Shown one piece after another: positions 537-60,292 of a stretch of 64,000 nt of DNA. Each line of letters opens with the position of its first letter. The stretch's first letter is position 1. The stretch covers positions 179,379 to 243,378 of IMG/VR virus record IMGVR_UViG_3300048924_000191; one strand, 5' to 3'. Below the pieces are notes generated by a model. The model had not been told where the DNA came from and ran no database searches. It saw nothing but the letters and a program-made list of their open reading frames with translations. The translations under genes were made by a program, and so were the position numbers.

Positions 537-2588
537 TTAACGACGATCCCAGTCATCGCTGAAGAAGCGACCACCACGACCTTCGCGATCACGATCGCGG
601 TCACGACCACGACGACGGCTCACGCCGCCTTCGGAGATTGCCTGCGACGAGAACAGACGGTTACCCACCGAACGACGACCCGACAGGGTGTCGCCACCGG
701 CGATGTACGGGCTCATGCGGGACTTGTCCAGGGCGGACGCGAGAGCCGGCAGCAGGTTCTTCTGGAAGACCAGCTGTTCGGCAGTCTGTACGACATGGAT
801 GTCCGGCACGAACTTGCGCAGGATGTGGTAACGCTCGGACAGGTTGTAGTCGACGGTGTGGCGGCTGTCTTCGAAGGTGAACTGGTAGTCGCGAACGAGC
901 TCCAGATCTTTCGAACCAGCACGGGTCAGCACAGCCGGTACGTTCCACTCGCTCAGCGGACGCAGAGTCGAGGTGTCCGGGTCGGTCCAGGTACCGATCA
1001 GAACGCGAGTACCCGCGGATTCAACAGGCAGAGGCATGCTGCCGCCGTTCATTTCGCGGTATTCTTCGCGGAAGCGGTCGTCGGTCAAAACGTCCCAGGC
1101 ATCGTACAGCTTGGTGCACAGGGCGTCGACTTTCGACTTGCTTTCCTCGGTGGCGATCTTCTCGAAGATCGACAGGATTGCGGCGTTCTGGCCGGAACTG
1201 GCGGTGACCATACCGAACGACACGTCGCGCTTGAAGAACGCGTCGATGAAGTCGGCGAAGTCGTCGTCGTTCATGTTGCTGGTGACCAGGTCCATTGCGT
1301 CGCGACGCTGATCATCTTCCAGATCCGCCAGCAGGGCGATATCCTTCAGATCGAACACCGGCTTGACTTTGCCACCGACGGTCTTGCGAGGACGCGCCAT
1401 GTTGGTCCAGCGGTAGTCGTTCGACAGCAGAGCCACGGAGCCCAGCGCCAGACCTACCAGACCCAGGCTGTTCGGGTAACCGTCGACCGGGGCGATGGAG
1501 TTGATGTTGATAACGCCCTGCATGAAGGCGGTTTCGTCATCTTCGTCGCGGCGGCGGGTACGCTTACGGCTCAGGCGGTTGCGGTCACGATCGTTGTCGT
1601 CGTCCTGGATGAACATATCCAGAGAGCAACGGGCTTCGACCATCGGAGTACGCTCGTACAGATCGTCCTCGTCATCGTCGGTCCGTTCCGAGTAGTGCGA
1701 AGTTACCAACGCATCGGTACGGATCGGCAGGCCGGAGGTGTCGTGGCCGAACGGCTGGTTGTAATCGATGGTGGCTTCCAGACGGTCGCCGCTGTCGATC
1801 AGTTCCGGACGCAGAGCGAACTCGCTGATTGCGTCTGGATTGCTGGCGTCCAGGATTTCCTGACGGTAACCGCACAGGGCATCGATGGCATTGTCGAAGA
1901 TCTGAGCAACCACGCGGTTGTTTTCTTTCTCGGAGACTTCCGAGATCAGATCCGCCAGGATCACCTGCGAGTTGACCAGCACGACACGTTTGCAACCCAG
2001 GCCGGCCGCTTCTTCACGAATGCCTTTGGTGTAGGCGTCGTTCATGCGGTCTTCCGGCAGCACCAGCGCCTCGTAGTTGTCGCCACGAGATACCGCGTTG
2101 CGGGTGGTCTGGGAACCCGGCTGCTCGATGCAGAGGGTGTAGACCAGAGTTACGCCGCCCGGGATCAGTTTCGGCAGAGGCAGGCAGACCAGCAGGGACG
2201 GCAGAGCACGCGAGCCTTTACGGCCGGTATACGGCAGAACCTGGAAGCGCGACTGCTGGATGTCCGGGTGGATGTTTGGATTGTCGAAGGTCTTGGCAGC
2301 CTTGAAGGTATCCATCAGGATAGCCAGGGCAGCGTCAGAAACACCCGACATTTGCGGGCGGTTCATGGCACGACCGAGGGACGCCATGTTGAAGCCACGG
2401 CCTTCGTCTTCTTCTTCACCACGACGCCCGCGCTTACCGCCACGGTCGCTGCGGTCACGGTCGCGGCCACCACGATCTTCATCACGGTCGCGGTCACGGT
2501 TTTCGGTGCGGTTCTCGCGGCCTTGATCGCCGGTCGACTTGTCGCCGCCGGTTGGTTCGTCGTCGAGTACCAGATCGTCATTGCTCAT
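537..2588 (-). CDS. chmA: Chimallin, major phage nuclear shell protein
   Basis: 683 aa with RBS AGGAG. Segments QPFGHDTSGLPIRTDALVT..DDLYE and LIGTWTD..LRPLSEWN match recalled chimallin segments (QPLHDTVGNPIRADIVVT..NEFYE; LGNWFD..RDRRDLD). Synteny between the nvRNAP gene and DNA polymerase agrees. Confidence 0.9.
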   Translation of the reverse strand: MSNDDLVLDDEPTGGDKSTGDQGRENRTENRDRDRDEDRGGRDRDRSDRGGKRGRRGEEEDEGRGFNMASLGRAMNRPQMSGVSDAALAILMDTFKAAKTFDNPNIHPDIQQSRFQVLPYTGRKGSRALPSLLVCLPLPKLIPGGVTLVYTLCIEQPGSQTTRNAVSRGDNYEALVLPEDRMNDAYTKGIREEAAGLGCKRVVLVNSQVILADLISEVSEKENNRVVAQIFDNAIDALCGYRQEILDASNPDAISEFALRPELIDSGDRLEATIDYNQPFGHDTSGLPIRTDALVTSHYSERTDDDEDDLYERTPMVEARCSLDMFIQDDDNDRDRNRLSRKRTRRRDEDDETAFMQGVININSIAPVDGYPNSLGLVGLALGSVALLSNDYRWTNMARPRKTVGGKVKPVFDLKDIALLADLEDDQRRDAMDLVTSNMNDDDFADFIDAFFKRDVSFGMVTASSGQNAAILSIFEKIATEESKSKVDALCTKLYDAWDVLTDDRFREEYREMNGGSMPLPVESAGTRVLIGTWTDPDTSTLRPLSEWNVPAVLTRAGSKDLELVRDYQFTFEDSRHTVDYNLSERYHILRKFVPDIHVVQTAEQLVFQKNLLPALASALDKSRMSPYIAGGDTLSGRRSVGNRLFSSQAISEGGVSRRRGRDRDRDREGRGGRFFSDDWDRR

Positions 2589-2642
2589 GTGTTGCTCCTA
2601 AAGGACAATTGTCTTGCGATAATGGATTGCACAACTTCTCCT

Positions 2643-2730
2643 AATCGCGTCAGAGATTCCCGATCACGACTCACCGTCGTGAGCCCATCGGGCCTAGATT
2701 TCCCGGTGTGCAGCCGGGTATAATGCGATT
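2643..2730 (-). promoter_or_regulatory. Structured 5' leader of chmA (putative three-way junction)
   Basis: AATCGC/GCGATT closes two hairpins, CCCGG-CTGCACA-CCGGG and CCCGAT..CTCAC-GACG-GTGAG..ATCGGG, about 55 nt upstream of the start codon. Confidence 0.5.
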
Positions 2731-2781
2731 CGGTTCAAACCTTATATTGCCAAAGTAAAGTCTTACATCGAATCTCCCCTT

Positions 2782-2822
2782 CTGAATCAGTACAGTAATG
2801 TACTAACGTGATATTTTTAATC
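2782..2822 (-). promoter_or_regulatory. Early-type promoter motif copy (proximal, upstream of chmA)
   Basis: GATTAA-N13-GTACATTA-N7-GATTCAG. It contains TACATTAC, 7/8 identical to the phiKZ early consensus TATATTAC. Confidence 0.6.
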
Positions 2823-2838
2823 ACAATCATCGTCACGT

Positions 2839-2879
2839 TTGTATCACGATGATAATGTATCACCCACGAATCTTTAAAC
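2839..2879 (-). promoter_or_regulatory. Early-type promoter motif copy (distal, upstream of chmA)
   Basis: GTTTAA-N13-ATACATTA-N7-GATACAA. It shares an identical 19-mer (atcacgatgataatgtatc) with the copy at 36356-36396. Confidence 0.6.
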
Positions 2880-18227: not shown

Positions 18228-18398
18228 TCAGTCCACGTCTTCAGCGCAGGACTTGCAGTAGAACTCATGGGTGTAGGTACCGTTACTTACGGGTCTGGAA
18301 ATCTTCACGACCGCCCGCTTCGTACAGTTGTTTCCGTCGCAGTCCTGGACGTCACCTGAGTGTAAGTGTTCGCGTTTGACTTGTTTCACTACTTCCAT
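18228..18398 (-). CDS. 56-aa McsA-like Zn-finger microprotein
   Basis: Manual translation MEVVKQVKREHLHSGDVQDCDGNNCTKRAVVKISRPVSNGTYTHEFYCKSCAEDVD. It has RBS GGGGAGG, its own promoter-like motif and its own terminator. Confidence 0.75.
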   Translation of the reverse strand: MEVVKQVKREHLHSGDVQDCDGNNCTKRAVVKISRPVSNGTYTHEFYCKSCAEDVD

Positions 18399-18428: not shown

Positions 18429-18469
18429 GTGATTCGTGTTGGGAATGTACGATCTAATTCTTTTTGGAT
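18429..18469 (-). promoter_or_regulatory. Degenerate early-type promoter motif
   Basis: ATCCAA-N13-GTACATTC-N7-GAATCAC. Confidence 0.45.
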
Positions 18470-35208: not shown

Positions 35209-35637
35209 TTAATGATCGAAGTAAACCAGAACGCGAATGTCTGGACGAGTCTTCAATTCGAAAAATTCTTCCAGGAAGTCATCGACATCGCCCGCATCGC
35301 TGTTATCGCGGAAGAGGACTTCAGACAGATAGTCACGCCAATCCCACCCGCTTCCCGTAGGTTGACCGTCCAACAACATCGGCTGGTCGAAGTTGAACGT
35401 CAGCAGATCTTCGAGCATGAACCAGCAATGCCCGTAATCGCTATCAAGGTACTCGCGGTACGTGGTGCCGTCCGGTATCCCAGCAGTGCCGATGAAACGA
35501 TCGTGCTGGTGACCGAACTCCTTACCCAAGAACATAGCGGCGAATTCATCGGACGGCTTGTGGCTGACCTCATCGATCTTCTTCCACTTACCGTCTGTCT
35601 GCACTTCCAAGTAATAGTAGATTGCTTGACCCATCAT
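35209..35637 (-). CDS. Hypothetical acidic protein
   Basis: 142 aa, AAGGAG upstream. Confidence 0.7.
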   Translation of the reverse strand: MMGQAIYYYLEVQTDGKWKKIDEVSHKPSDEFAAMFLGKEFGHQHDRFIGTAGIPDGTTYREYLDSDYGHCWFMLEDLLTFNFDQPMLLDGQPTGSGWDWRDYLSEVLFRDNSDAGDVDDFLEEFFELKTRPDIRVLVYFDH

Positions 35638-35758
35638 AAACTCCTTCGTTACAAAAAATAAAAAGAGAGGGCATACAGCCGGGACCGAAGTCCCGGCTGT
35701 ATGTGTCGCGCGTCGCTAGGACGTTGGCCGTTCCAGGCGGCGCGCCAACCAGGCCGAA

Positions 35759-36229
35759 TCAGTTGGCGAAGGTGCTGGCTGCGCTTTCGCCCAGATAGCT
35801 GACGACCTTCTTCAGGTCGGTCTTCTTGCGGCCGCTGCCCAGGATGACGTCGGTGGTGGAGACGCCGAACTTCTGCCACGGTTTGCCCATGGCGGTGCCG
35901 GAACGCTCGCGCTCGTAGCTGTTTTCGATGGTGCTGTAGCCCAGCTTGACTTTCAGCGAACCGGACTTCAGTTCCGGGTTGGCTTTCATGTGGTCTTGCT
36001 GCAGCTCGCCGTGGGCCAGGGCCAGACCGGCGGTGATGTCCAGGGTGAAGTCTTGGCTGTCTTTCAGGCCGTCCATGGTCAGGGTCGGCGGCAGGAAGCG
36101 GGCGAAGACGTCATCGAGTTGCTTCTCGTCCTTGGGCACGGTCACGTTGGTGGTTGCATCCAGTACCAGCTCCGGCTTGACAGCGTCGGCGATTTCGCGG
36201 ATACGTGGGTTCAGTTCTTCACGGGACAT
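35759..36229 (-). CDS. Probably highly expressed early protein
   Basis: 156 aa with extreme GC3 codon bias, its own promoter motif, a structured leader and a terminator. Confidence 0.8.
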   Translation of the reverse strand: MSREELNPRIREIADAVKPELVLDATTNVTVPKDEKQLDDVFARFLPPTLTMDGLKDSQDFTLDITAGLALAHGELQQDHMKANPELKSGSLKVKLGYSTIENSYERERSGTAMGKPWQKFGVSTTDVILGSGRKKTDLKKVVSYLGESAASTFAN

Positions 36230-36355
36230 GGGGCATTTCCTTGATGGTAGTGTTGCTGATGGATCGAGAGGACTCTCGAGGGTTTCGTTCGTTCACATGA
36301 CAGTGAGTGTTTGTAACTACTTACAAGCAACCCATGAAGGATTGCGAGAAGATGC

Positions 36356-36396
36356 TGGAATCACGATGATAATGTATCGCTGTGTTTTGGTTAACT
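36356..36396 (-). promoter_or_regulatory. Early-type promoter motif
   Basis: AGTTAA-N13-ATACATTA-N7-GATTCCA. Confidence 0.65.
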
Positions 36397-36452
36397 TCGC
36401 AAAAAAAAAAGAATGGTAGAGCAGCACCCGAAAGGGTGCTGCTCTCATACCG

Positions 36453-36653
36453 TCACTCTTTCGGAGTGAACGCTTTCTTCATCAGCTTGTAGCCGCCGAA
36501 GACGGCCAGGCCCGCGACAGCAGCGCCGACGACGACAGCGCCGACTGGGTGAGCGGAGGCGAGGTCTTTGGCACGGGTAACCAGAGTGGCGCCGCGGATA
36601 GCTTCAGCAGTAACAGCAACAACAGCAGCAGCGCCTTGGATTTCAGCAGCCAT
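36453..36653 (-). CDS. 66-aa Ala/Val-rich membrane microprotein
   Basis: C-terminal helix VGAVVVGAAVAGLAVFGGYKLMKK; AAGGAG; flanked by a promoter motif and a U-tract terminator. Confidence 0.75.
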   Translation of the reverse strand: MAAEIQGAAAVVAVTAEAIRGATLVTRAKDLASAHPVGAVVVGAAVAGLAVFGGYKLMKKAFTPKE

Positions 36654-36704
36654 GGTAAATCTCCTTGTGTCTTAAATAGGTAGGGTATTGCTAAGAGGTT
36701 GGTA

Positions 36705-36745
36705 TTGATTCGGAACAGCTATGTATTACTGAAAATCTTTTAACT
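36705..36745 (-). promoter_or_regulatory. Early-type promoter motif
   Basis: AGTTAA-N13-ATACATAG-N7-GAATCAA. Confidence 0.75.
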
Positions 36746-36749
36746 GCGA

Positions 36750-37742
36750 TTACTTCATGAGGCGTGCGTTTGCGATCGTGTTGTTTACCAGATCGTTGAC
36801 GTACGCAGGATCAGCTGTGCGCAGTTGGACCATCAGATTGGTGATCTGAACTGGTGTCATGTGTACAGCTGTGATGCGCAGCGCCAGACGTGCACGACGG
36901 TAGCGATCGCCAGTTTCCGGAAGCATGCCGGCCAGTTCTTCCACTCGTTCTTGCAGAGTGTTGTCAGGCGTACCGGTCAGATAGGCTTCGACCCGCGCCA
37001 TGATAGCGGTGAGATCTACCTTGTCCGGATCTTCGATCTTGGCCCTTGCATGGACTTGGGTCATCTCCATGCGTGCACGCGCCTCTACTGGGAGTTCGGT
37101 AGAGAACGGAAGCCGTGCTGGACCACCATGATCCAGGTTAGGGAAGCTCCCGTAGTTCAGCAACGTGAACGACTCGTCGAACCCTTCGCCACGAGGCTCG
37201 TCTTCTATCGTTCCCGGCGCTGGCGCAAGGATGTCCTTGACCCCGTTAAGGTGATCACCCTCGAAGTCTTCCGGAACACTGTCGCCGATGACGATTTCGC
37301 GATTCACCAACCAACCCACTTTGGCGTGGATGGGGAGCATGTTGGCGATATTGCAAATGCGCGAGACAACCTCGGAGATACCCACGCCGTAACCGTCTTT
37401 ACCGCCCATCGCTTGATGGATGGATTCGAAGGTCACCGCACCCGTGGGGTACAGACCCGACAGTGGAGCCGGTACGTTTTGAACAACCACCTCGTTCTCG
37501 CCGCCGGTGAAGCGGTCGAAGAAGATCACGTTACCGACAGGGGTAACGATCCCCACGACACGACGGTTGTTCTCAGGGCCGGTGTTGAAGCGGAAGCGAG
37601 TGCCCATAGGCAGACCCAGAGCCATCGACATCATGGGTTCGAAGTAACCGGTGCTACCACGAAACTCTTCCTTGTATTCGATGTCCACGATCTTGCGAGT
37701 GTTTTCTTCGAACAGGGAGGTGAGGAATTCTGCTGCGTTCAT
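36750..37742 (-). CDS. Hypothetical protein
   Basis: 330 aa, AGGAG upstream. Confidence 0.75.
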   Translation of the reverse strand: MNAAEFLTSLFEENTRKIVDIEYKEEFRGSTGYFEPMMSMALGLPMGTRFRFNTGPENNRRVVGIVTPVGNVIFFDRFTGGENEVVVQNVPAPLSGLYPTGAVTFESIHQAMGGKDGYGVGISEVVSRICNIANMLPIHAKVGWLVNREIVIGDSVPEDFEGDHLNGVKDILAPAPGTIEDEPRGEGFDESFTLLNYGSFPNLDHGGPARLPFSTELPVEARARMEMTQVHARAKIEDPDKVDLTAIMARVEAYLTGTPDNTLQERVEELAGMLPETGDRYRRARLALRITAVHMTPVQITNLMVQLRTADPAYVNDLVNNTIANARLMK

Positions 37743-37805
37743 TGTGTTGTCTCCTAAGACGGTGTAAGGACCCTACACCCGTAAGGTCCCGTTGATTGAA
37801 TGAAA

Positions 37806-38210
37806 TTAAACGGCAGGGCTCAGGCTGAGCTTGAAGTTGGTGTTTGTGTTCACCACTTTCGCGATCAGACTGGTAGAGAACGCGATACCAGCGGCGTGTT
37901 GCTCAACGCCGTTGTTCAGGCCGGCCATGACTTCCTGGAAGAAGTCGTCAGCGATCGGCTCGATCACGCCATCGACTTGCAGGCCGGTGATCGACCATGG
38001 ATCGACGTTGGCTACCGAGTTCTCGATGATGTCGATTTCCTCGGCGGTGAGTTCTTCAACGGGACGAGCGTGCAGTTCTTGCAGCTTGTCGTTGATGGCG
38101 TTGAACTGCACCAGCGCTTCAGGAGAGAAGCGGGCAGAGGGTTCGCCTTCGGTAGCCACGATGCGAGCAATGATGGTGGCTTCCAGAGTTTGTGTGTTCA
38201 GTGCTTTCAT
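37806..38210 (-). CDS. Hypothetical acidic protein
   Basis: 134 aa, AGGAGG upstream. Confidence 0.75.
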   Translation of the reverse strand: MKALNTQTLEATIIARIVATEGEPSARFSPEALVQFNAINDKLQELHARPVEELTAEEIDIIENSVANVDPWSITGLQVDGVIEPIADDFFQEVMAGLNNGVEQHAAGIAFSTSLIAKVVNTNTNFKLSLSPAV

Positions 38211-38261
38211 TTCAGTGTCCTCCTAGGACGGTGTATGACTCATTAGTGAGTCAGCATTGGT

Positions 38262-38302
38262 TTGATTCATGACAACTATGTATCATTGAAACTATTTTAA
38301 CT
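38262..38302 (-). promoter_or_regulatory. Early-type promoter motif
   Basis: AGTTAA-N13-ATACATAG-N7-GAATCAA. Confidence 0.75.
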
Positions 38303-38447
38303 TCGATATTTCTTCCTTCAATTGGACCTTCATCTTCTGGCCCAATTCGCTCTTATCTGTCCAGACTTTGACAGTAAGATACGCGCTCCCAAGAAGGCTG
38401 GTAATACCAACCACGTTGACAACTACCTTAAAGACTGAGAGGTTCAT
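38292..38447 (-). CDS. 51-aa single-pass membrane microprotein
   Basis: MNLSVFKVVVNVVGITSLLGSAYLTVKVWTDKSELGQKMKVQLKEEISKLK; ATGA-coupled; not in the ORF track. Confidence 0.65.
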   Translation of the reverse strand: MNLSVFKVVVNVVGITSLLGSAYLTVKVWTDKSELGQKMKVQLKEEISKLK

Positions 38448-38587
38448 TCTCCACGTTCCTTCTTGCCGTCGGCACGACCCTTATACGCCATTGCGATAAT
38501 GACACCGCCAGCGGCAGCGCCGATGATAGCGGACTGCACAGCCACGCGTGCGATCAGAAAGAGAGCATAACCGTTCGGTATATTCAT
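38444..38587 (-). CDS. 47-aa single-pass membrane microprotein
   Basis: MNIPNGYALFLIARVAVQSAIIGAAAGGVIIAMAYKGRADGKKERGE; AGGAG; not in the ORF track. Confidence 0.7.
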   Translation of the reverse strand: MNIPNGYALFLIARVAVQSAIIGAAAGGVIIAMAYKGRADGKKERGE

Positions 38588-38611
38588 GATGTTTCTCCTG
38601 ACAGGGTTGTA

Positions 38612-38652
38612 TTGATTCACGTTGGCTATGTGTCAGTGTAAAATCTTTAACT
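38612..38652 (-). promoter_or_regulatory. Early-type promoter motif
   Basis: AGTTAA-N13-ACACATAG-N7-GAATCAA. Confidence 0.75.
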
Positions 38653-38708
38653 TTAATTCAACGGCATAAAGACCACCTACGGCCGCAAAGCCGTAGGTGG
38701 TCAGGCCA

Positions 38709-40106
38709 TCACTCGATCTTGTCGACGACGTTCTTGATGAGGGACGCCATGAGGGTGGTGGTGTACACCGCCTGCTCATAGACAACACTCTCCAGACCGG
38801 CGATACGACCAGCTGCATCTTCCAGCGCCGAGCACACACCCTTCAGATCGGACTTCTCTTCCGAGGTCAGCGTTGCGGTATTGCCGCGAGCAGACTTCAG
38901 AGCCGATTCGAAGTCGTCCAGGTTCAGACGATCGGTGGTGAACTTCACGTAACCACGAACCATTTCAGCCGCTTTCACCAACTCTTCGTAGGTGGCAGCA
39001 GACTTCATCTTCGAGGCATTGACGTGCTGGTGATACTTGTCGACGCCTTTCTTGATCGCATCGACATCACTTGCCGTATGCAGGGCGTCGTTAACGCCAT
39101 GAGCGAACCGGTTACCGTTCTGCCCGATGGCGCCTTGGATGGCGGCATGACGTACGGAACCGACAAACAGCTTCCAGGTAGCGGTACCCACACCCTTGGC
39201 CAGACCCATCTTCGAGAAGCTGTGTTCGTTGGAGCGCGAGAAGACAGGAACTGCCAGGTGAGCCATCTTGCCAGGCTTGTCTTTGGCGTTGATGGTGAAG
39301 TTACCCAGCAGACCGCCCTTAGCAGTCGCAACGTTCGACAGTTCACCGAAGTGACGGCCATTCATTGCGTTAGCCACACCAGCCTTGACATTGGTACCCA
39401 GCAGGGACTTGGCCATCGATACGACTTCGGACAGACCCTTAAGCGCAGCGTCGTGAGCGTGAGTCAGAAGTTCGGTCTGGCGATGCAGAGCAGCGTCCAG
39501 GTCGTTGACTTCTTTACCTTCCACAGTCAGGAACCGACGGAAGCCGTCGTGCTTGAGGATCACACCGCCTTCACGTAGTTTGGCTGCGATCGGAGTCAGC
39601 ATGTGCATGGCTTCTTCGAGGGCCTTGTTAGCGCTCTCGAGTTTGGCCTTGTCACGACGCAGGAACTCCATGATGCGACCTTCCGCACTGAAGTCCAGAG
39701 TGAGCGCACGGCACTCACGAGCGATCTCAGCCGAACGACGCGCATCACGCGCCAGACCACGCATCCGACCTTCATCACTGCCTGCCGATTCGAACGACTC
39801 AGCAGTCGCCGGCAGCTTCCAGGCGCGTACCACGGTGTTGAACTCGCGGTGCAGGCTTTCGATCGCCACTTCAGCAGTCAGGGTGTCGTTGGCTTCGGCC
39901 AGTACTTCAGCACGATCGCCAATCTCATCCAGGTGGTCAGCCACTTCACCAGCGTCAGCCGCAGAAGAGATCTCAGCCGCCAGACTGTTTTCGGTCACGT
40001 CGTCCAGGCGATGAACGACGGCGTCGTCGACCGCACCGGTGTCCTCAGGCGTGATAGCGCCCGATTCGGCGGTGTAGCCTTTCAACAGCTCTTCGATGTC
40101 ATTCAT
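38709..40106 (-). CDS. Internal head (ejection) protein, paralog 2
   Basis: 465 aa with an acidic propeptide and repeated A/S-x-E sites (AIE, SFE, SAE) typical of prohead-protease substrates; in the protease operon. Confidence 0.7.
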   Translation of the reverse strand: MNDIEELLKGYTAESGAITPEDTGAVDDAVVHRLDDVTENSLAAEISSAADAGEVADHLDEIGDRAEVLAEANDTLTAEVAIESLHREFNTVVRAWKLPATAESFESAGSDEGRMRGLARDARRSAEIARECRALTLDFSAEGRIMEFLRRDKAKLESANKALEEAMHMLTPIAAKLREGGVILKHDGFRRFLTVEGKEVNDLDAALHRQTELLTHAHDAALKGLSEVVSMAKSLLGTNVKAGVANAMNGRHFGELSNVATAKGGLLGNFTINAKDKPGKMAHLAVPVFSRSNEHSFSKMGLAKGVGTATWKLFVGSVRHAAIQGAIGQNGNRFAHGVNDALHTASDVDAIKKGVDKYHQHVNASKMKSAATYEELVKAAEMVRGYVKFTTDRLNLDDFESALKSARGNTATLTSEEKSDLKGVCSALEDAAGRIAGLESVVYEQAVYTTTLMASLIKNVVDKIE

Positions 40107-60033: not shown

Positions 60034-60098
60034 TGTAGTGACCTCCTAGGTCGATGTATTGACGGCATAAGCGGGGCGACTTGCGCCGCCCCGATAGA

Positions 60099-60224
60099 TC
60101 AGCTTACGGCAGGTGCCGGACGCTTGCTCAGTACTTCAGCTTCCAGCAGACGGCGCTTGTAGCGGCCGGACATCATGAGCGCACCGATAATCATGCCAGC
60201 GCCCAGGAACAGGAAACGGTCCAT
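60099..60224 (-). CDS. 41-aa single-pass membrane microprotein
   Basis: MDRFLFLGAGMIIGALMMSGRYKRRLLEAEVLSKRPAPAVS; AAAGGAG, own promoter motif and own terminator; not in the ORF track. Confidence 0.75.
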   Translation of the reverse strand: MDRFLFLGAGMIIGALMMSGRYKRRLLEAEVLSKRPAPAVS

Positions 60225-60251: not shown

Positions 60252-60292
60252 TTGATTCAATCCCACTATGTATCATCATAAATCGTTTAACT
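60252..60292 (-). promoter_or_regulatory. Early-type promoter motif
   Basis: AGTTAA-N13-ATACATAG-N7-GAATCAA. Confidence 0.75.

What the first reader, a model, noticed from the sequence alone, without database searches (positions are those of the whole stretch)
36453..38587. Early regulon is dominated by single-pass membrane microproteins missed by the ORF track
SEEN: three of the four best promoter copies sit directly before tiny hydrophobic ORFs: 38444-38587 (47 aa, GAAAGGVII) coupled to 38292-38447 (51 aa), 36453-36653 (66 aa, GAVVVGAAVAG), and 60099-60224 (41 aa, GAGMIIG). Each has one helix, three with small-xxx-small packing motifs, followed by a basic tail. KNOWN: Chimalliviridae enclose the injected genome in an early lipid vesicle before the shell forms. 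INFERENCE: a set of immediate-early inner-membrane peptides that may remodel that vesicle, exclude superinfection or block membrane-bound defence sensors.
Basis: partly seen in the sequence, partly recalled or inferred. Interest (0 to 1): 0.66.

Follow-up and report, generated by a model that had tools for sequence, protein, structure and literature searches.

The report
Early-promoter membrane microproteins of a jumbo phage
Four tiny genes in a phiKZ-like giant phage are real, conserved genes for probable single-pass membrane proteins. Each sits just behind a copy of the promoter that also drives the phage's known early genes, but what they do is untested.

Summary
The window is the last 64 kb of a 243-kb phiKZ-like jumbo phage from root and rhizosphere metagenomes.

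**Promoter.** A 41-nt promoter box occurs four times exactly in the window. A matrix built from it finds 24 sites genome-wide. All 24 are on one strand and all are intergenic. Its layout matches the phiKZ early (virion RNA polymerase) promoter. It also precedes the chimallin-like gene, the homologue of non-virion RNA polymerase subunit gp68, and an RNA polymerase beta gene.

**The small ORFs.** Three of the four exact copies are followed by ORFs of 47+51, 66 and 41 aa.
- Each has a Shine-Dalgarno site, a 17-25 residue uncharged hydrophobic run and a basic C-terminal side.
- All are under purifying selection: 30 of 41 changes against a 94% relative are synonymous.
- All keep their length, position and promoter in diverged relatives. 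The equivalent genes in the cultured Pseudomonas phage pPa_SNUABM_DT01 are annotated as hypothetical.
- The 66-aa protein belongs to an undescribed family (A-x-A-H-P, TM, G-x-Y-K). It forms a conserved promoter-gene-terminator unit.

- Public gene callers already call all four ORFs.
- "Dominated" overstates the case. Small hydrophobic proteins are strongly enriched (11/44 against 5/230) but are a minority of promoter-proximal genes.
- The 66-aa protein has two helices.

Early timing, membrane insertion and function are all inferred. I found no RNA data.

The parts
38671..38702 (-). Hairpin ending the upstream 465-aa virion-protein gene. It insulates the next transcription unit.
   Evidence: Read from the sequence. 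Kept in L007, L009 and L011 with compensatory stem changes. The pattern scan did not list it because its T-run is short.
38612..38652 (-). Promoter copy in front of the 47-aa gene: TTAAA/T-rich part, GAC-ACATAG core, N7, GAATCAA.
   Evidence: Exact match; matrix score 49.8. Conserved in L007, L009 and L011.
38444..38587 (-). 47-aa gene. ATG start 6 nt after AGGAGA. Hydrophobic run 15-35, conserved G23-xxx-G27-G28, basic tail.
   Evidence: pN/pS 0.09 against L007. A 47-aa orthologue sits in the same place in L009, L010 and L011. The 58-aa GTG start used by JGI lies at or upstream of the expected transcript start.
38292..38447 (-). 51-aa gene, translationally coupled to the 47-aa gene by an ATGA overlap. 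Hydrophobic run 8-26, then a charged helical tail.
   Evidence: pN/pS 0.13. Orthologues of 49-50 aa with the same 4-nt overlap in L009-L011.
38262..38302 (-). Promoter copy in front of the soluble 134-aa gene. Its upstream edge overlaps the stop of the 51-aa gene.
36750..38210 (-). 134-aa and 330-aa genes of unknown function, lying between the microprotein units.
   Evidence: No PHROG or Pfam family. pN/pS 0.13 for the 134-aa gene.
36705..36745 (-). Promoter copy in front of the 66-aa gene.
   Evidence: Conserved in L007, L009-L011. Same type of box in L030, L031 and L032.
36453..36653 (-). 66-aa gene: amphipathic helix 2-34, A-H-P kink, hydrophobic helix 37-55, G-x-Y-K and a basic tail. Member of a family of 64-101 aa proteins.
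   Evidence: pN/pS 0.16. Homologues at 66-73% identity. Profile search and alignment A2.
36408..36445 (-). Intrinsic terminator (12-bp stem plus T-run) closing the monocistronic 66-aa unit.
   Evidence: Equivalent hairpin plus T-run after the family gene in L030, L031, L032 and pPa_SNUABM_DT01.
36354..36401 (-). Promoter copy with an ACATTA core (the phiKZ-like variant), in front of the 156-aa gene at 35759-36229.
   Evidence: Matrix score 40.0. Kept in L007, L030 and pPa_SNUABM_DT01.
60252..60292 (-). Promoter copy in front of the 41-aa gene.
   Evidence: The core and downstream box are kept in L029.
60099..60224 (-). 41-aa gene. Hydrophobic run 4-20 with G10-xxx-G14, then an Arg/Lys-rich tail.
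   Evidence: A 40-aa homologue at 74% identity in the same synteny in L029.
60071..60093 (-). GC-rich hairpin after the 41-aa gene, without a clear T-run.
   Evidence: Read from the sequence. A hairpin is also present in L029.
537..2858 (-). Context: a chimallin-like 683-aa gene preceded by two tandem promoter copies, with cores at 2801 and 2858.
   Evidence: PDB chimallin 7sqq/8igg at E 0.005. It is the best own-genome hit of phiKZ gp54, at E 0.003.

Best explanation
These are real, conserved genes for small bitopic inner-membrane proteins. Each unit is driven by its own copy of the phage's virion-RNA-polymerase (early) promoter, so they would be among the first phage products made after injection.

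Shown:
- The ORFs evolve as proteins and keep their length, position, SD site and promoter across diverged relatives.
- The promoter type is shared with the chimallin-like gene and with RNA polymerase genes, and it matches the phiKZ early promoter in layout.
- Small hydrophobic proteins are enriched behind it.

Inferred:
- Transcription in the first minutes.
- Insertion into the inner membrane, N-out/C-in for the 41-, 47- and 51-aa proteins by the positive-inside rule.
- Oligomerisation through the conserved G-xxx-G faces.

Most likely role (a weak inference from precedent): these proteins act on the host envelope right after entry. That could mean excluding superinfecting phage or blocking host membrane proteins or sensors. 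It could also mean decorating inner-membrane-derived membranes, including the EPI vesicle, after it has formed. They would not be building the vesicle.
For: Coding:
- Pooled over the 47-, 51- and 66-aa genes, 30 of 41 substitutions against L007 are synonymous where 25% is expected (p 1.4e-10). Their pN/pS of 0.09-0.16 equals that of neighbouring genes.
- Codon-usage scores are positive.
- Orthologues of the same length sit in the same place in L009-L011 and L029.
- In the cultured phage pPa_SNUABM_DT01, tiny hydrophobic ORFs of similar size occupy the same position.

Promoter:
- 24 sites, all on one strand and all intergenic.
- The layout (T-rich part, ACAT core, N5, TGAAT) equals phiKZ's TATATTAC-N5-TGAAT sites.
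- The gp68 homologue starts +40 nt after a site here and +41 nt in phiKZ.
- An RNA polymerase beta gene and the chimallin-like gene also follow sites.
- Literature: such motifs were early promoters whenever tested (PMC7598289, PMC8244752).

Membrane character: hydrophobic runs and charge bias are conserved across relatives.

Enrichment: 11/44 against 5/230 small hydrophobic proteins (p 1.4e-6).

phiKZ itself has small N-terminal-TM ORFs right after two early-type sites.
Against: - No RNA or protein evidence. The only run labelled RNA is probably DNA and covers other parts of the stretch.
- The four exact copies carry ACATAG, where the copies before the chimallin-like gene, the gp68 homologue and the RNA polymerase beta gene carry ACATTA, as in phiKZ. 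Their timing could therefore differ.
- The 41-aa hydrophobic stretch is short and only moderately hydrophobic.
- No dedicated topology predictor was available.
- None of the four has any Pfam, PHROG or NCBIfam family. The 66-aa family has no match in phiKZ or 201phi2-1. Nothing therefore ties them to a known function.
Confidence: 0.6

Rival explanations
1. They are lysis-timing proteins (holin, antiholin or spanin-like), not early host-takeover factors.
For: One hydrophobic helix plus a charged C-terminal tail is the classic holin build. A paralogous-looking 102-aa protein with an N-terminal TM, behind another promoter copy, hits the Rz-like spanin phrog_1152 at 1.6e-7.
Against: They share their promoter type with the chimallin-like gene and RNA polymerase genes. 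Their neighbours are virion and unknown genes, not lysis genes. No lysis enzyme was found among the neighbours scanned. The likely spanin pair lies about 140 kb away, at G000 75097-75857. None of the four has a holin family hit.
Confidence: 0.12
2. They are phage-encoded components that act on the EPI vesicle or on the hand-over of the genome to the nucleus.
For: The phage has virion and non-virion RNA polymerases and a weak chimallin match. The vesicle is derived from the inner membrane, and early mRNAs are translated near it (bioRxiv 10.1101/2024.03.24.586471; PMC13282480). The 66-aa unit is conserved as a stand-alone promoter-gene-terminator module.
Against: The vesicle forms at injection, before phage protein synthesis. 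The 66-aa family is absent from phiKZ and 201phi2-1, which do make vesicles. There are no localisation data.
Confidence: 0.13
3. The conserved feature is the RNA or DNA (leader, regulatory element) and the small ORFs are not translated.
For: No translation evidence was obtainable. The 47-aa protein diverges fast between distant relatives (pN/pS 0.5-0.8, with saturated synonymous sites).
Against: There is a strong excess of synonymous change at short distance. Reading frame, length, start, SD site and the ATGA coupling are all preserved at 34-49% amino-acid identity. No Rfam match in 35600-39000, the stretch that holds the 47-, 51- and 66-aa genes.
Confidence: 0.04

Closest known systems
Hypothetical proteins PA10_00100, PA10_00101 and PA10_00102 of Pseudomonas phage pPa_SNUABM_DT01 (MW735835)
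   Same: Same place: after the protease and two roughly 420-470 aa structural genes. Same order: terminator, promoter box, two tiny hydrophobic ORFs (46 and 45 aa), then a 90-aa protein with N-H-P followed by a hydrophobic helix, then terminator, promoter and a roughly 156-aa gene. The 90-aa protein matches the A2 profile at E 0.009. The 46-aa protein shares F4, L5, L7, G10, G14, G20 and R21 with the 41-aa protein.
   Different: Sequence similarity is weak and not significant on its own. The pair is separated by 2 nt rather than overlapping. There is no functional annotation in that record either.
phiKZ early (virion RNA polymerase) promoters and the small ORFs behind them
   Same: Same promoter layout, and the same genes behind it (gp54/chimallin and gp68). 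phiKZ has a 68-aa and a 109-aa ORF with an N-terminal TM directly after two such sites.
   Different: The core is TATATTAC in phiKZ against ACATTA or ACATAG here. No sequence homologue of the 66-aa family is found in phiKZ or 201phi2-1. Synteny breaks after the protease.
T4 Imm and Sp, T5 Llp: small early membrane or lipoproteins that exclude superinfecting phage (from established knowledge, not tested here)
   Same: Small, envelope-located, made early by a virulent phage. This genome also has a 42-aa lipobox ORF in an operon behind a promoter copy.
   Different: No sequence or family relationship. Exclusion activity is untested.
Class III-type holins and antiholins
   Same: One hydrophobic helix and a charged C-terminal tail.
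   Different: They share their promoter class with early genes, no lysis enzyme was found among the neighbours scanned, and there is no holin family hit.

Membership tests
phiKZ-type virion-RNAP early promoter | AT-rich conserved box of about 10 nt near -10, with a T-rich stretch upstream | tested here: met
   Consensus A-T-AAA ... TT ... T-ATACATT ... TGAAT. Same layout as phiKZ sites. Described in PMC7598289 and PMC8244752.
phiKZ-type virion-RNAP early promoter | Lies upstream of, and co-oriented with, early operons, including chimallin and non-virion RNAP genes | tested here: met
   All 24 of 24 sites are intergenic and on one strand. Sites lie before the chimallin-like gene, the gp68 homologue and an RNAP beta gene.
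phiKZ-type virion-RNAP early promoter | Drives rifampicin-resistant transcription in the first minutes of infection | not testable with these tools
   No usable RNA run.
Chimalliviridae (nucleus-forming phiKZ-like phages) | Split multisubunit virion and non-virion RNA polymerases | tested here: met
   phrog_3148 at E 0, phrog_2986 and phrog_3295. 39% identity to the DT01 virion RNAP subunit. gp68 homologue at 2e-30.
Chimalliviridae (nucleus-forming phiKZ-like phages) | Chimallin (ChmA) shell protein | tested here: inconclusive
   The 683-aa protein matches PDB chimallin at E 0.005 over about 350 residues and is the best own-genome hit of phiKZ gp54 at E 0.003. A direct genome search with gp54 found nothing.
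Single-pass (bitopic) inner-membrane microproteins | One hydrophobic segment long enough to span the bilayer, with charge bias across it | tested here: met
   Uncharged runs of 17-25 residues, Kyte-Doolittle 1.43-1.99, and C-side Lys/Arg in excess, all kept in relatives. The 41-aa protein is borderline. No DeepTMHMM available.
Single-pass (bitopic) inner-membrane microproteins | Found in the membrane fraction | not testable with these tools
   Needs fractionation or imaging.
Holins | Encoded beside an endolysin or spanin, and expressed late | tested here: not met
   Neighbours are virion and unknown genes. The spanin-like pair is at G000 75097-75857. The promoter type is shared with early genes.
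Superinfection-exclusion proteins of the T4 Imm/Sp kind | Sequence membership in those families | tested here: not met
   No PHROG, Pfam or NCBIfam hit for any of the four.
Superinfection-exclusion proteins of the T4 Imm/Sp kind | Blocks entry of a second phage when expressed alone | not tested
   Bench assay.

The most novel reading that the evidence does not exclude
The 66-aa A-H-P/TM/Y-K family has its own early promoter and terminator across a whole clade. Together with the coupled 47/51-aa pair, it could be a phage-encoded membrane component that marks or opens the inner-membrane-derived EPI vesicle. Possible roles are mRNA exit or hand-over of the genome to the nascent nucleus. That would make these the first phage-made integral membrane proteins of that compartment.
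Probability: 0.1. Interest if true: 0.85.

Novelty: new member of a known kind. Interest (0 to 1): 0.5.

Why it matters
A 2026 review lists the small uncharacterised genes of jumbo phages as an open question (PMC13282480). How the membrane-bound first stage of infection is managed is also unknown.

This work gives a short, well-defined target list. It contains four conserved microproteins and one new family, each with mapped promoters and terminators and with equivalents in a cultured Pseudomonas phage. All can be tested directly by knockdown, tagging and exclusion assays.

It also shows that membrane microproteins are a statistically enriched class behind the early promoter. They are not an annotation artefact.

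Tried and rejected
- Complex prediction of the 47-aa with the 51-aa protein gave no verdict (score 0.02). It counts neither for nor against binding.
- The ESM Atlas look-alike search gave nothing above chance: scores were at or below 0.80, and the structural neighbours are generic helical-hairpin fragments.
- tblastn of the neighbouring 330-aa and 465-aa proteins, and of two family members, against cultured phages found nothing. blastn of the region also found nothing.
- The word search for the 51-aa protein found only itself. Its orthologues were found through synteny instead.
- Read laying: all runs are contigs. The one RNA-labelled run is probably DNA and covers only 35700-35793, 36120-36382 and a poor 41-nt match. 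There is therefore no expression evidence.
- The three long hits of the profile search (506, 1194 and 2161 aa, each with many stretches) look compositional (Ala/Gly-rich) and were set aside.
- phiKZ gp74 is not the counterpart of the 717-aa RNAP beta protein. Which phiKZ subunit it matches was not settled.
The analysis was redone by reference.
- No alternative genetic code was used.
Full report
**What the window is.** The window is bases 179379-243378 of a 243,378-bp virus record with direct terminal repeats. It encodes split multisubunit RNA polymerase subunits. The 1438-aa protein matches phrog_3148 at E 0. It is 39% identical to the virion RNA polymerase subunit of Pseudomonas phage pPa_SNUABM_DT01 and about 35% identical to those of 201phi2-1 and PhiPA3. 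A 683-aa protein (window 537-2588, minus strand) matches PDB chimallin weakly (E 0.005). It is also the best own-genome hit of phiKZ gp54. The phage is therefore a distant phiKZ-like jumbo phage. Nucleus formation is likely but not proven. Near-identical DNA occurs in root and rhizosphere metagenomes from many studies.

**The promoter.** Read on the transcribed (minus) strand, the repeat has four elements:
- a TTAAA/T-rich part;
- GAT-ACAT followed by AG or TA;
- five to seven variable bases;
- TGAAT or GAATCAA.

Its strict 3' half has four exact copies in the window and five in the genome. A position matrix converges on 24 sites. All are on the minus strand, none on the plus strand, and all lie in the 10% of the genome that is non-coding (p 7.5e-25). 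Locally shuffled genomes give 0.2 hits.

The layout is that of the phiKZ early promoter. Upstream of phiKZ gp54 the sequence reads T-rich, TATATTAC, five bases, TGAATC, and other phiKZ sites repeat this pattern. The gene content behind the sites agrees:
- The homologue of phiKZ gp68, the fifth non-virion polymerase subunit (BLASTP 2e-30), starts 40 nt after a site here and 41 nt after one in phiKZ.
- An RNA polymerase beta gene (phrog_3295, 2e-162) follows another site.
- The chimallin-like gene follows two tandem sites.

The literature states that such motifs, found in every RNA-polymerase-encoding jumbo phage, proved to be early promoters whenever tested. It also states that phiKZ gp54 carries one (PMC7598289, PMC8244752). 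I therefore read the motif as the virion-polymerase early promoter. This is orthology-based inference, not measurement.

**The microproteins.** Behind three of the four exact copies lie SD-led ORFs:
- 47 aa (38444-38587), overlapping by ATGA a 51-aa ORF (38292-38447);
- 66 aa (36453-36653);
- 41 aa (60099-60224).

The region reads as a chain of insulated units. In order: hairpin, promoter, 47+51; promoter, 134+330; promoter, 66, strong terminator; promoter, 156, terminator.

Each small protein has one uncharged hydrophobic run of 17-25 residues with more Lys/Arg on its C side. This pattern is kept in relatives. The AlphaFold2 model of the 66-aa protein, made with a 16-sequence alignment (mean pLDDT 71.5), has two helices, 2-34 and 36-62, broken at a conserved A-H-P.

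**Are they genes?** Yes.
- Against a relative 94% identical in DNA (L007), the 47-, 51- and 66-aa ORFs show 11/3, 11.5/5.5 and 7/3 synonymous/non-synonymous changes. Their pN/pS is 0.09-0.16, like the neighbouring genes at 0.09-0.13. Pooled, 30 of 41 changes are synonymous against 25% expected (p 1.4e-10).
- In more distant relatives (L009, L010, L011), at 34-73% amino-acid identity, the ORFs keep their length, order, SD site, ATGA overlap and promoter box.
- The 41-aa ORF has a 40-aa homologue, in the same synteny and with the promoter, in L029.
- All four are already called as genes in public sets. JGI's 58-aa GTG start for the 47-aa gene would begin at or before the expected transcript start, so it is probably wrong.

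**A new small family.** A profile of the 66-aa protein, searched against 1.84 billion representatives, found a family of 64-101 aa proteins. They share an amphipathic N-terminal helix, A-x-A-H-P, a Gly/Ala-rich hydrophobic helix, G-x-Y-K and a basic stretch. Many also have a variable Pro/Ala-rich tail.

In three further loci (L030-L032) the family gene again has the promoter box upstream and a hairpin plus T-run downstream. In L030 it lies downstream of the S80 head protease, as it does here.

In the cultured phage pPa_SNUABM_DT01 the same position holds, in order: a terminator, a promoter box, a 46-aa and a 45-aa hydrophobic ORF, a 90-aa protein that weakly matches the profile (E 0.009), a terminator, a promoter and a roughly 156-aa gene. 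All are annotated as hypothetical.

phiKZ and 201phi2-1 lack the family, and synteny breaks there. No Pfam, PHROG or NCBIfam model covers any of the four proteins.

**How general is the association?** I used a simple codon-usage gene call (274 genes) and one uniform hydrophobicity rule: 17 residues without D, E, K or R, with mean Kyte-Doolittle of at least 1.4. Small (120 aa or less) hydrophobic proteins then number:
- 6 of 22 first genes after a site, against 10 of 252 other genes (p 6e-4);
- 11 of 44 genes starting within 1 kb of a site, against 5 of 230 (p 1.4e-6).

The class is strongly enriched but does not dominate. Most first genes are larger proteins without that character, among them the chimallin-like protein, polymerase subunits and an Arc-like regulator.

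A post-hoc observation concerns the core variant. Of the six sites with the ACATAG core, five precede small hydrophobic proteins. Of the sixteen other first genes, one does (hypergeometric p about 0.001, my arithmetic). Either the strongest copies are reserved for these genes, or ACATAG marks a sub-class whose timing may differ.

phiKZ itself has a 68-aa and a 109-aa ORF with an N-terminal TM directly behind early-type sites. The association is therefore probably a family trait. My literature searches found no description of it.

**Mechanism.**
- Shown: these are coding genes with conserved dedicated promoters of the type that drives canonical early genes, and their hydrophobic and charge architecture is conserved.
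- Inferred: they are transcribed early by the injected polymerase, inserted into the inner membrane, and self-associate or pair through the conserved G-xxx-G faces.

The function is open. By precedent (T4 Imm and Sp, T5 Llp; my knowledge), envelope-level exclusion or interference with host membrane proteins is the most likely role. An early-type operon elsewhere in this genome also holds a 42-aa lipobox ORF and several multi-TM small proteins, which fits this reading.

A role at the EPI vesicle is possible only after the vesicle has formed. The vesicle is reported to arise at injection from host membrane and injected proteins (bioRxiv 10.1101/2024.03.24.586471; PMC13282480). A lysis-timing role is less likely given the promoter class and the neighbours.

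**Verdict.** This is a new member of a known kind (early phage membrane microproteins), including one undescribed small family. It has clear experimental handles but no functional evidence yet.

Noticed in passing
L010:2118-2660 (relative of the window's 38588-38708 spacer): A 180-aa GIY-YIG / I-TevI-like homing endonuclease gene is inserted exactly at the promoter core in front of the 47-aa gene. It replaces the upstream half of the box and leaves the downstream GAATCAA part.
   Followed up: partly
window 2801 and 2858 (cores), gene 537-2588 (-): Two tandem promoter copies precede the chimallin-like gene. Its product has a long Asp/Arg/Gly-rich, probably disordered, N-terminal extension that PDB chimallins did not align to.
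   Followed up: partly
window 38588-38620: The JGI gene call gives the 47-aa gene a 58-aa GTG start. That start lies at or upstream of the expected transcript start and has no SD site. The ATG at 38587 has AGGAGA upstream and is the start used in all relatives.
   Followed up: yes
window 18228-18398 (-), promoter core at 18448: Another promoter copy precedes a 56-aa soluble, Cys-rich microprotein with two Cys pairs. It looks like a zinc ribbon.
   Followed up: no
G000:C1:121544-122965 (outside the window; L001): This is a membrane island behind the best-scoring promoter copy and a second copy. It holds a 103-aa three-TM protein, a 123-aa soluble protein, a 42-aa ORF with a lipobox, a 34/39-aa TM ORF and a 112-aa three-TM protein. 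None has a family match.
   Followed up: partly
G000:C1:73976-75857 (outside the window; L013): A likely spanin pair: a 145-aa protein with an N-terminal TM and coiled coil, overlapping a 108-aa lipobox protein (weak LysC-like hit). It lies just upstream of a promoter copy, which is followed by three similar proteins with an N-terminal TM and coiled coil (105, 106 and 111 aa). A 102-aa look-alike elsewhere hits the Rz-like spanin phrog_1152.
   Followed up: partly
L030:2871-3295: In this more distant relative, the slot of the 47/51 pair holds a single 96-aa protein with an N-terminal TM, behind a terminator and a promoter box. The position and type are kept while the sequence has turned over.
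   Followed up: partly
whole window (habitat and host lead): Near-identical DNA is held by root, rhizosphere and plant metagenomes from at least ten studies. The closest cultured relative infects P. aeruginosa. A compost jumbo phage described as similar to it (JPTI55) infects P. fluorescens SBW25 (bioRxiv 10.1101/2024.08.29.610337). This suggests a Pseudomonas host and a possible laboratory system.
   Followed up: no
genome-wide promoter set (cores listed): The sites fall into two core variants. ACATAG has six sites, five of them before small hydrophobic proteins. ACATT(A/G/C) is the phiKZ-like variant, found before the chimallin-like gene, the gp68 homologue and the RNA polymerase beta gene. 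Whether this reflects promoter strength or a separate timing class is unknown.
   Followed up: partly
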